A stretch of 57,608 bases of DNA from Octopus sinensis (lineage: Eukaryota), in contig NW_021833593.1 of NCBI RefSeq assembly GCF_006345805.1, forward strand, positions 1-57,608, in the 5' to 3' direction. The notes beneath the pieces are model-generated. The model saw nothing but the letters and a program-made list of their open reading frames with translations, had not been told where the DNA came from and did not search any database. A program made the translations under genes and the position numbers. Position 1 is the stretch's first letter. Every line of letters starts with the position of its first letter. Positions 44,204 to 46,342 of this stretch are shown here, piece by piece.

Positions 44204-46342
44204 CTAATCTTTGCTCGTCTTCGGGATGTTACTGAAAACATATTCAAAGAATTTCTGAATCTTGCGAGCCAAGGCCTTTTCTTCATTTTTCTCCCGGTCA
44301 GCAGGAGCCGGTTTCTGGCATAGCAACCTTCATCATTGCCAGGACATTGGTCAGAAGTGAGCTGGAGTCGTTCCGACTGTTGATTCTTCCTGCGCTGGTC
44401 ATTGTCAGATGGTGGACCCAATGGGTCGTCAGGAAGAAGGTGTGACTGAACAGAAGAGTGGTCAGCTGGTCAGGTTTCTCTCGTTGTCTGAATCTCGCTG
44501 CTGGTTGTGACTGGTGGAATTGGTCTGGTGTTGTCAGAGTCACGGTCAGTCAGACATAGTGGCCACACGGGCATTTACAGCCTGACCAACTTCATTATCT
44601 CATGCGGACAGTCTGTGTCACTGTCAACTGGTCATCTTGACCTCTTCATTCTGACCAACTCCCTTGGGTCATTGTCACACAGCCATACTAGGTCATTGTC
44701 AACTGGTCATCTTGACCTCTCCATTCTGACCAACTCCTTTGGATCATTGTCACACTGCCATACTAGGTCATTGTCAACTGGTCATCTTGACCTCTCCATT
44801 CTGACCAACTCCCTTGGGTCATTGTCACACTGCCATACTAGGTCATTGTCAACTGGTCATCTTCACCTCTCCGTTCTGACCAACTTCCTTGGGTCATTGT
44901 CACACTGCCATACTAGGTCATTGTCAACTGGTTGTCTTGACCTCCCCATTCTGACCAACTTCCTTGGGTCATTGTCACACTGCCATACTAGGTCATTGTC
45001 AACTGGTCATCTTGACCTCTCCGTTCTGGCCAACTCCCTTGGGTCATTGTCACATAGCAACACTAGGCCACTGTCAGCATGCTTTGTCCACATCCTTGGG
45101 TCACTGTCATGCCATACCATTAGGTCTCTGTCAACTGGTCAGCTGAGCCAATCCAGCCATGCCTGTTCCATTGGGTCACTGTCAGGTGGAAAGCGTCAGT
45201 CGACAGCAATTTATGTTACTGTGGCCCAAATTCTGCGAGGTTCACAAATGAGTGGCGTTTCTGCAATTATTCGTTGTGGATCCGTTGAGCACCTGTGATG
45301 TCACATTGGTCAGGCTGGTGTTGAGGAGCTCGGGTCAACATCACGCGACTCTACACTTAGTCACGTTGTTATTGCTGTTGTTGTTGCTGCTGCTGCTGAT
45401 GTTGATGCATAGCGGCGTCTGTGACAATGTTGAGCTGGTTTCGTATTCTGTCTGAGACTGGTCCTTACCACCATCTTCGTCGTTGCAGTTTTTACTGTTG
45501 TCCACAGGTGTTGGGTAGGTAACGTTATTGCCATTAGAATTGGCGTGGATGCTGCGATGTCTTTCACAATAATGCTGCCGTTGTTTGTAGACGTCATGTT
45601 CTTACCGCCATCAACATCATTGTTGCTGCTGGCGGTGGTAGTAGTAGAGGTGGTGGCCATAGATGTAGCCTCACCTTTGACGTCGTTGTTATTATCGACG
45701 ACAATATTATTGCTATTGCGAACCTGTTGCCGCTGGTTGTCGGAAGGATCTGCAATGACATCGGGCAGCTGTGCACTGGTTTCGTTTCTGCATATGCAAT
45801 ACATATGTTTGTAGACCGAGTGCAACAAAGCACGGAGTTTACAGTTACATGGCACCGGGAGACTCAGAACAATAGTTTCTTCCCCATCAAATATCGGTCT
45901 TCTTTCCAACGTGGCATTCTTGTTTTTGGGGGCAGAGTTGACACCGATATTCTTCACAGTGGTTGCGTCGACGTCTGTCTTAGTGCGGTTGCGGTGATGG
46001 TCACGGCTTTGGACAATGCCTTGGAGACGGTCTCGACGACGGTCCTTGACGCGATGGTTACGGTTGAGCTGGCCGAGAGCCGGGCTCGGCTGGAGAAGGA
46101 AGCGTCACTGTCACGTCTGAATGATTTTGTAGCGGTCCTGCTCCAGCTGGGGTGGACATTGTCAAAACGAGTCCGTTGCTGCCTTTTGCTGCTGCTGCTT
46201 CCGTTGAAGCTTCCCCTCCTCTCCTTTCTCCTCTTCTTCACCTTGATGATGATGAGGCGGAGGATAATGTTGATGGCGATGAGGATGATGGGGGTAATTG
46301 CTGTTATAATGCAACTGTTGCTGCTGATAGTGGTGAAGGGGG

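What the first reader, a model, noticed from the sequence alone, without database searches (positions are those of the whole stretch)
44603..45184. Selenocysteine content amplified by a 75-bp coding tandem repeat
Seen: six near-identical 25-codon units, each with four TGA as two U-Q-U motifs, plus two older diverged units where the second U is AGA (UQRP) or TGG (UQWP), each one base from TGA. Unit lengths are multiples of 3, and no substitution creates TAA or TAG in this frame, whereas both other minus frames contain TAA or TAG in this region. Inference: recent unequal crossover adds Sec four at a time, so Sec number may be a copy-number polymorphism.
Basis: partly seen in the sequence, partly recalled or inferred. 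Interest (0 to 1): 0.85.

Follow-up and report, generated by a model that had tools for sequence, protein, structure and literature searches.

The report
Selenoprotein P selenocysteine-rich repeat array
This is the selenium-carrying tail of a selenoprotein P gene in an invertebrate (probably octopus-like) genome, where a 25-codon block holding four selenocysteine codons has been copied six times in a row; this protein family is already known to gain selenocysteines by such modular expansion.

Summary
The repeat is real. Six head-to-tail 75-bp units lie on the minus strand (45052-44603), with no indels. Each reads UQUPKGVGQNGEVKMTSUQUPSMAV with four in-frame TGA. Two older, diverged units (45202-45053) carry UQRP and UQWP.

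The array sits in a 465-codon frame (45601-44207) with 44 TGA and no TAA or TAG. Upstream on the same strand are spliced exons that match Pfam SelP_N (E=6e-23), so the gene is a selenoprotein P (SelenoP) homologue with 49-50 candidate Sec codons.

Differences between copies are mostly synonymous in the Sec frame only (7 synonymous, 5 not; Fisher p=0.0005; pN/pS about 0.13). The units therefore evolved as coding sequence.

- One of the two other minus frames has no TAA or TAG in the region.
- The copies are not recent; mean synonymous difference is 0.23.
- Copy-number polymorphism could not be tested.

New caveats:
- Compared with the one relative found (P0001), the window has a net 1-nt frame break at 45543-45539. 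It lies about 340 nt upstream of the array and is either an assembly error or a null allele.
- Rfam finds no SECIS; there is a single pattern-level candidate at 42787-42700.

Verdict: a new member of a known kind, of moderate interest.

The parts
44603..45052 (-). Six near-identical 75-bp (25-codon) units, each encoding UQUPKGVGQNGEVKMTSUQUPSMAV with four in-frame TGA. The last 18 nt of unit 6 diverge (..UQUHRLSA).
   Evidence: TRF gives 6.1 copies, 92% matches and 0% indels. Unit register and per-unit differences are. pS 0.23 and pN 0.03.
45053..45202 (-). Two older, diverged copies of the same module (25 and 19 codons plus flank). They carry UQUP, UQRP (AGA), UQUP and UQWP (TGG).
   Evidence: Translation. 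DNA alignment to the unit consensus, with in-frame indels.
44204..45538 (-). Sec-rich C-terminal coding region, in the frame that is open from 45601. It holds 44 in-frame TGA, the first at 45343. The stop is TAG at 44206-44204. The last residues are ..WQUURLLCQKPAPADREKNEEKALARKIQKFFEYVFSNIPKTSKD.
   Evidence: Residues 193-250 of relative P0001 align to 45538-45347 in this frame at 75% identity.
45539..45543 (-). Frame break. Five nt (CCAAT) face two residues (6 nt) of the relative. Upstream coding is in one frame and downstream coding in another.
   Evidence: tblastn of P0001 against the window. Both frames printed. No slippery heptamer and no room for an intron.
45544..46942 (-). Large exon, upstream part. 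It covers the end of the SelP_N domain (CGRQTFRF..CNC), a His-rich stretch (46392-46243), Sec codons at 46164 (UQC) and at 46113 and 46107 (UQU), an uncertain in-frame TGA at 46788, and a conserved Sec-free block (..LSLPVPCNCKLRALLHSVYKHMYCICRNET..).
   Evidence: Splice acceptor and phase. P0001 residues 2-190 align to 46104-45544 at 68% identity.
48363..48563 (-). SelenoP coding exon (..LEKIHHMLQTNREF..IPVYQDS..NDIILYD), with acceptor CACCAG| and donor |GTAATT.
   Evidence: It is part of the Pfam SelP_N match.
49537..49826 (-). First coding exon. It holds ATG 49826-49824, a hydrophobic signal-like stretch, and the redox motif U-K-P-U (TGA at 49565-49563 and 49556-49554). The donor is |GTAAGT. 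A polypyrimidine tract plus CAG acceptor lies just upstream at about 49846.
   Evidence: Pfam SelP_N E=6.1e-23, 81.9 bits against a cut-off of 23.2.
42700..42787 (-). Only SECIS candidate. Helix I pairs 42787-42778 with 42709-42700. The AUGA core is at 42776-42773. An 11-position helix II follows, then AAAA, a CCC/GGG mini-stem and a 3' AGAU.
   Evidence: Pattern and energy scans. Fold -27.2 kcal/mol, z=-2.5. The 10-bp inverted repeat is I12. Rfam does not recognise it, so its status is inconclusive.

Best explanation
The finding is the selenocysteine-rich C-terminal tail of a selenoprotein P (SelenoP) gene on the minus strand, spanning about 49826 to 44204. The protein has a secretion signal and an N-terminal thioredoxin-like SelP_N domain with a U-x-x-U redox motif. 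A His-rich linker follows, then a long tail in which UGA is read as selenocysteine. A 25-codon module holding two U-Q-U pairs was duplicated in frame, first in an old round (two decayed copies) and then up to six head-to-tail copies. Copies 2-6 contribute 20 of the 44 tail UGA codons; the gene total is 49-50. Each gain or loss of a unit, by replication slippage or unequal exchange, changes the Sec count by four.

Shown here: the anatomy, the family of the N-terminal domain, and purifying selection on the copies in the Sec frame.

Inferred from what is established for SelenoP in other animals: the UGAs are decoded processively as Sec by the SECIS / SBP2 / eEFSec / tRNA-Sec machinery, directed by the 3'UTR, and the product is a secreted selenium carrier or store.

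The 1-nt frame break at 45543-45539 is most simply a consensus error in the assembly.
For: - Tandem array with no indels; unit structure.
- 44 TGA, 0 TAA and 0 TAG in 465 codons. The one-copy version still beats all 5000 shuffles for TGA count.
- Pfam SelP_N E=6e-23 on the spliced upstream exons, which have canonical GT-AG junctions and matching phases.
- Changes between copies are 7 synonymous to 5 non-synonymous in the Sec frame (p=0.0005). The other frames of that strand give 1:11 and 2:10. The open plus-strand ORF gives 2:10.
- pN/pS is about 0.13.
- No copy has a change in any TGA codon.
- The UQU/UQC motif recurs outside the array at 46164, 46113 and 44407.
- A relative (P0001) conserves both the mid region and the start of the tail in a single frame, and ends where the window has its first tail TGA.
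[quoted passage not shown] Up to 132 UGAs are reported in bivalves and 162 in lampreys, with only UGA-type stops taken as the signature (PMC13134290).
Against: - As assembled, the tail is not in frame with the start codon. A net 1-nt indel lies at 45543-45539. Read literally, the upstream frame ends at TAA 45213-45211, 9 nt before the older units.
- No Rfam SECIS match anywhere in 33500-44700, even at E<=10 on an 81-nt slice.
- Only one pattern-level SECIS candidate exists, and that pattern gives about 1.5 chance hits per window. SelenoP genes normally have two SECIS elements.
- No transcript, ribosome or selenium data are available.
- No orthologous array could be fetched.
Confidence: 0.8

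Rival explanations
1. Recently inactivated gene or null allele. The frame break at 45543-45539 is real, translation ends at TAA 45213-45211, and the array is an untranslated relic that has not yet decayed.
For: - Frame break relative to the only relative found.
- The site CCAAT is not a long homopolymer, so an assembly error there is not guaranteed.
- No Rfam SECIS.
Against: - Downstream of the break there are 465 codons without TAA or TAG, and 44 intact TGA.
- The copies show pN/pS of about 0.13.
- The tail frame is conserved at 75% identity with the relative just after the break.
- Any inactivation would therefore have to be very recent, or confined to this haplotype.
Confidence: 0.13
2. Non-coding minisatellite whose unit happens to lack TAA/TAG, or a repeat protein encoded by the fully open plus-strand ORF 44507-45298.
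For: - Other satellites in the window also give TGA-rich frames free of TAA/TAG. One example is minus 15083-14472 with 15 TGA in 204 codons, over the 11/22/44-bp satellite.
- The plus-strand ORF has no stop at all.
Against: - Those satellites carry 4-8% indels; this array has none.
- Third-position and synonymous excess appears only in the Sec frame. The plus ORF frame has 2 synonymous to 10 non-synonymous changes.
- The array is flanked on both sides by unique sequence in the same TGA-rich open frame, downstream of SelP_N exons on the same strand.
- The plus ORF has no homologue.
Confidence: 0.03
3. The array is translated in the +1 minus frame (..PVDNDLVWQCDNDPRELVRMERSRU..), giving about one Sec per unit rather than four.
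For: That frame has no TAA or TAG across the finding region and has 7 TGA.
Against: - It is closed by TAA at 45213-45211 and at 44577-44575.
- Changes between copies are 1 synonymous to 11 non-synonymous in that frame.
- It is not continuous with the conserved tail frame.
Confidence: 0.02

Closest known systems
Mollusc SelenoP: Pacific oyster Magallana gigas with 46 UGAs, and bivalves with up to 132 UGAs (Baclaocos et al. 2019, J Mol Biol 431:4381). The paper is not held here. It is cited through PMC13134290 and from my own knowledge of its abstract.
   Same: - N-terminal SelP_N domain plus a long Sec-rich tail.
- Dozens of in-frame UGA and no other stop type.
- Sec number raised by modular expansion of a multi-Sec segment.
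- An aquatic invertebrate.
   Different: - Here the expansion is visible as a clean 75-bp array of six units, with four UGA each.
- The redox motif is U-x-x-U.
- Only one SECIS candidate was found.
- There is a frame break in this assembly.
Lamprey SELENOP2 with 162 and 139 UGAs (Tico et al. 2026, PMC13134290)
   Same: [quoted passage not shown]
- The same argument from exclusive use of UGA among stop codons.
- Simple-sequence DNA in the 3'UTR. The lamprey has a CA-rich stretch between its SECISes. Here (TA)n/(TATC)n at 43179-43777 lies between the stop and the SECIS candidate.
   Different: - It is a vertebrate paralogue with a CXXU motif and two detected SECIS elements.
- It has far more UGAs.
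Human and other vertebrate SELENOP (10 Sec in human)
   Same: - Signal peptide, SelP_N domain, His-rich linker, and Sec clustered in the C-terminal tail.
- From my own knowledge, U-x-U spacing near the human C-terminus.
   Different: - No near-identical tandem array.
- UxxC rather than UxxU.
- The vertebrate tail model was not matched: no Pfam family hit on the tail.
Amphioxus 3NSelP (Jiang et al. 2012, PMC3473315)
   Same: Sec number in a SelP increased by internal DNA duplication.
   Different: There the N-terminal Trx-like domain is triplicated, one Sec each. Here a short C-terminal module with four Sec is repeated.
In-frame coding minisatellites (VNTRs), such as those in mucins or DRD4 exon 3 (general knowledge)
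   Same: Head-to-tail units whose length is a multiple of three, with no indels, in an exon.
   Different: - The units carry recoded stop codons.
- Polymorphism is not shown.
- Copies are rather diverged at synonymous sites (pS 0.23).

Membership tests
Selenoprotein P (SelenoP/SELENOP) | N-terminal thioredoxin-like SelP_N domain | tested here: met
   Pfam PF04592: E=6.1e-23, 81.9 bits against a cut-off of 23.2, residues 54-211 of the spliced exons.
Selenoprotein P (SelenoP/SELENOP) | Sec in a UxxC-type redox motif of the N-terminal domain | tested here: met
   ..GLFSAN-U-K-P-U-LKNIV.., with TGA at 49565-49563 and 49556-49554. This is a variant: Sec also occupies the second position.
Selenoprotein P (SelenoP/SELENOP) | C-terminal region with multiple in-frame UGA and no UAA/UAG | tested here: met
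   44 TGA, 0 TAA and 0 TAG in 465 codons. 0 of 5000 shuffles reach the one-copy TGA count.
Selenoprotein P (SelenoP/SELENOP) | One continuous reading frame from the start codon through the Sec-rich tail | tested here: not met
   Net 1-nt indel at 45543-45539 relative to P0001. It may be an assembly error. The relative is continuous across this point.
Selenoprotein P (SelenoP/SELENOP) | SECIS element(s) in the 3'UTR, usually two | tested here: inconclusive
   No Rfam hit in 33500-44700. One candidate at 42787-42700 fits the ATGAN-helix-AA-...-NGAN pattern. The candidate at 39852 was rejected.
Selenoprotein P (SelenoP/SELENOP) | Secretion signal and His-rich linker | tested here: inconclusive
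   The hydrophobic stretch ITLTLALLVAVTG and the His-rich stretch at 46392-46243 were seen by eye. No signal-peptide predictor was available.
Selenoprotein P (SelenoP/SELENOP) | UGAs actually decoded as Sec; protein carries selenium | not testable with these tools
   Needs ribosome profiling, 75Se labelling or mass spectrometry.
In-frame coding minisatellite (VNTR) | Head-to-tail copies, unit length a multiple of 3, no frame-breaking indels | tested here: met
   75-bp period, 6.1 copies, 0% indels. Register shown.
In-frame coding minisatellite (VNTR) | Copies under purifying selection in the coding frame | tested here: met
   7 synonymous to 5 non-synonymous, p=0.0005, in the Sec frame only. 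pN 0.03 against pS 0.23.
In-frame coding minisatellite (VNTR) | Copy number varies between alleles or individuals | not testable with these tools
   No second allele or orthologous array was retrievable.

The most novel reading that the evidence does not exclude
The array is a segregating in-frame VNTR. Individuals or sister species would then differ by multiples of four selenocysteines per SelenoP molecule, giving a heritable dial on selenium transport or storage capacity. As a further possibility, the assembled allele could be a natural frameshift null of the Sec-rich tail that persists in the population.
Probability: 0.15. Interest if true: 0.55.

Novelty: new member of a known kind. Interest (0 to 1): 0.33.

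Why it matters
SelenoP is the one protein in which a stop codon is recoded many times on a single mRNA, and its Sec count is used as a proxy for an organism's selenium use. This locus shows the expansion mechanism plainly: one 25-codon module with four Sec, an old round and a younger round of tandem duplication, and selection keeping every UGA. That makes it a convenient natural series for asking how many UGAs a ribosome can decode processively.

It is also a warning for annotation. Standard gene callers would truncate the gene at the first UGA, or call the open antisense ORF instead.

The principle itself, modular expansion of the Sec-rich tail in aquatic invertebrates, is already published, so the gain is an example rather than a new idea.

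Tried and rejected
- **Rfam.** The gathering scan of the whole window found nothing. E<=10 scans of 33500-42000, 40000-44700, 42520-42860 and 42712-42792 found no SECIS, only microsatellite-driven miRNA look-alikes.
- **My own SECIS scans.** The strict helix criteria found nothing; a looser version gave 9 hits, none convincing as a SECIS, one of them the 42684 site. The pattern and energy scans gave 42776 as the best hit. Candidates at 42684, 42593 and 44336 (inside the CDS) were rejected because the AA motif is misplaced or the core is wrong. The candidate at 39852 was rejected because its ATGA is buried in another hairpin.
- **An intron to explain the frame change.** GT..AG pairs were enumerated and a codon-usage frame scan was run. 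All of this was set aside once P0001 aligned across the junction, leaving no room for an intron. No slippery site for programmed frameshifting is present.
- **Relatives.**
  - The N-terminal 216 aa and the antisense ORF found no homologues.
  - Exact look-ups of two window ORFs and of P0001 found no contigs.
  - A metagenome pattern scan and a related-loci scan found nothing.
  - The search with P0001 returned only itself plus two unrelated repetitive prokaryotic proteins.
- **Pfam.** No family on the Sec tail, the mid region, the 875-aa ORF or the transposase-like fragments.
- **RNA structure.** Nothing significant in the units (z=-0.6) or around the start codon (z=-0.9).
- **UGA context.** C follows UGA in 38 of 44 cases, but off-frame TGAs show the same bias (14 of 20), so this is not diagnostic.
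- **Baclaocos 2019.** The paper could not be read: the DOI and PMC6885538 are not held.

Full report
**1. The observation**

TRF reports a 75-bp tandem array at 44617-45076: 6.1 copies, 92% matches and no indels. The minus strand was read in the frame that opens at 45601. In that frame the array resolves into six 25-codon units starting at 45052, 44977, 44902, 44827, 44752 and 44677. The consensus is UQUPKGVGQNGEVKMTSUQUPSMAV (U = TGA), with four TGA per unit.

Directly upstream, 45202-45053 holds two older copies of the same module. They still align to the unit consensus at the DNA level, with in-frame indels. In them one 'second U' is AGA (UQRP) and another is TGG (UQWP).

One supporting statement is wrong. 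Only one of the two other minus frames contains TAA or TAG (1 TAA, 6 TAG). The +1 frame has none between 45210 and 44578. The plus-strand ORF 44507-45298 is open as well.

**2. Is it more than chance, and which frame is real?**

The open frame runs for 465 codons (45601-44207; stop TAG at 44206-44204) with 44 TGA, 0 TAA and 0 TAG. With the array collapsed to one copy there are still 24 TGA and no TAA/TAG in 340 codons. Of 5000 dinucleotide shuffles, none reached 24 TGA (mean 11.2) and 24 lacked TAA/TAG.

Repeats alone prove little. Two satellites elsewhere in the window (11221-11922 and 14500-15070) also give TGA-rich minus frames free of TAA/TAG. Those satellites carry 4-8% indels.

The decisive evidence is the pattern of differences between the copies.
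- Of 12 distinct changes, 8 fall on third codon positions.
- In the Sec frame, 7 are synonymous and 5 are not (dN/dS about 0.15, Fisher p=0.0005).
- The other two frames of that strand give 1:11 and 2:10.
- The open plus-strand ORF gives 2:10.
- No change touches a TGA codon.
- Pairwise pS averages 0.23 and pN 0.03.

The units have therefore evolved as coding sequence in the Sec frame. They are also not recent duplicates.

**3. What the gene is**

Upstream on the same strand lie exons with canonical splice sites and matching phases.
- 49826-49537 holds the ATG, a hydrophobic signal-like stretch and ..FSAN-U-K-P-U-LKNIV.. (donor |GTAAGT).
- 48563-48363 is the second coding exon.
- A large exon starts at 46942.

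Spliced together, these match Pfam SelP_N with E=6.1e-23. The large exon continues through a His-rich stretch (46392-46243) and three Sec codons (UQC at 46164; UQU at 46113 and 46107). A conserved Sec-free block follows, and then the Sec-rich tail. This is a selenoprotein P homologue with 49-50 candidate Sec codons. The in-frame TGA at 46788 is uncertain.

The genome is eukaryotic, AT-rich and full of microsatellites. An octopod origin is therefore a reasonable lead, but it was not tested.

**4. The frame break**

The N-terminal part and the tail are in different frames. I first looked for an intron. The third protein search then returned one relative, P0001 (UniParc UPI00071D5271, 251 aa, E=8e-69).

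tblastn places its residues 2-190 on 46104-45544 at 68% identity. Its residues 193-250 fall on 45538-45347 in the tail frame at 75% identity. Two residues of P0001 face only five bases (CCAAT, 45543-45539). There is no room for an intron and no slippery site. The window therefore carries a net 1-nt indel relative to a continuous orthologous frame.

Read literally, the upstream frame runs on to TAA at 45213-45211, just before the older units, so the array would not be translated. Downstream of the break, however, the 465-codon tail frame is intact and has been under selection. I therefore think an assembly consensus error is the most likely cause. A very recent or haplotype-specific null allele is the main rival.

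P0001 also shows that the mid region is coding. It ends (..VTKCRVT) exactly where the window has ..KCRVA followed by its first tail TGA (45343).

**5. SECIS**

Rfam gives no SECIS match anywhere downstream. My own SECISearch-style scans single out one site, about 1.43 kb past the stop and on the correct strand.
- The AUGA core is at 42776-42773.
- An 11-position helix II follows, then AAAA, a CCC/GGG mini-stem and a 3' AGAU.
- A 10-bp helix I pairs 42787-42778 with 42709-42700.
- The fold is -27.2 kcal/mol with z=-2.5.

The bare pattern gives about 1.5 chance hits per window, on both strands together. This is suggestive only, and no second SECIS was found. A (TA)n/(TATC)n tract at 43179-43777 lies between the stop and the candidate. 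Simple-sequence DNA in a SELENOP 3'UTR has a precedent in lampreys (PMC13134290).

**6. Mechanism**

Shown here: in-frame tandem duplication of a four-Sec module, in at least two rounds, with all UGAs kept and amino-acid change constrained.

Inferred from established SelenoP biology: the UGAs are recoded to Sec through 3'UTR SECIS elements and the SBP2 / eEFSec / tRNA-Sec machinery. The secreted product carries roughly 50 selenium atoms as a transport or storage form.

Each slippage or unequal-exchange event would change the Sec count by four. A pS of 0.23 and the lack of homogenisation argue that such events have been rare lately. This lowers, but does not exclude, the prospect of copy-number polymorphism.

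**7. Comparison and novelty**

[quoted passage not shown] Reported maxima are 132 UGAs in bivalves and 162 in lampreys. The exclusive use of UGA among stops is the accepted argument for recoding (PMC13134290; Baclaocos et al. 2019, not readable here). Internal duplication as a way to raise the Sec number was also discussed for amphioxus 3NSelP (PMC3473315).

This locus is therefore a clear new example of a known kind. Its unusual points are the tidy 75-bp array, the U-x-x-U motif, the frame break in this assembly and the unresolved SECIS.

**8. Verdict**

Interest is moderate to low for a specialist.

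Noticed in passing
window 45539-45543 (minus strand): Net 1-nt frame break inside the SelenoP large exon, relative to the only relative found (P0001). It is either an assembly indel or a real frameshift allele. Read literally, the upstream frame stops at TAA 45213-45211.
   Followed up: partly
window 49554-49565 (minus strand): The N-terminal redox motif reads U-K-P-U, with two TGA three codons apart, rather than the usual UxxC.
   Followed up: no
window 46786-46788 (minus strand): An extra in-frame TGA (..SKFRA-U-VRRMY..) lies between the SelP_N domain and the His-rich stretch. 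It is either a further Sec codon or a sign of an unrecognised small intron.
   Followed up: no
window 44507-45298 (plus strand): A 263-aa ORF with no stop at all runs antisense to the Sec array. Its substitution pattern is non-coding (2 synonymous to 10 non-synonymous) and it has no homologue, so it is a likely trap for gene callers.
   Followed up: yes
window 11221-11922 and 14500-15070: Satellites with 63/190-bp and 11/22/44-bp periods and 4-8% indels. Their minus-strand frames are also TGA-rich and free of TAA/TAG (for example 15 TGA in 204 codons). They serve as a negative control for 'TGA-rich open frame = selenoprotein'.
   Followed up: partly
window 17077-17372 and 22054-22349; ORF 17050-19677 (plus strand): A 296-nt direct repeat at 95% identity, 4977 bp apart. 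The first copy overlaps the start of an 875-aa GC-rich ORF with homopolymer runs of T, N, H, Q, P and D and no Pfam match.
   Followed up: partly
window 4854, 12678, 13335, 15732, 15870, 31292, 42134, 48297, 50953, 57046: Ten copies (0-3 mismatches) of a SINE-like motif, GCTCCAGCATGGCCGCAGTCAAATGACTGAAAC. I recalled it from octopus sequences, so it is a lead to the source organism. One copy lies in a SelenoP intron and one lies about 530 nt downstream of the SECIS candidate.
   Followed up: partly
window 43179-43777: About 600 bp of (TA)n/(TATC)n microsatellite lies between the SelenoP stop codon and the only SECIS candidate, inside the presumed 3'UTR. An AATAAA lies at about 43990 and a consensus donor-like GGTGAGT at about 43935.
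   Followed up: no
window 49740-49900 (minus strand): A U-rich tract just upstream of the first coding exon can pair with the purine run (GGAGGAGG..) just after the ATG, enclosing the start codon. The fold is not significant (z=-0.9). The U-tract also looks like a splice acceptor tract.
   Followed up: partly
window 7402-7746, 8126-8524, 48810-49049 (minus strand): Fragments reading ..KEGLRGKHYSSDEEVKTVVKKWLKEQSTEFYGAGIHALIRRWNIAIERNGDYVEK look by eye like the C-terminus of mariner-type transposases, but the two tested (7402-7746 and 48810-49049) gave no Pfam hit; 8126-8524 was not searched. One copy lies in the SelenoP intron between 49537 and 48563.
   Followed up: partly
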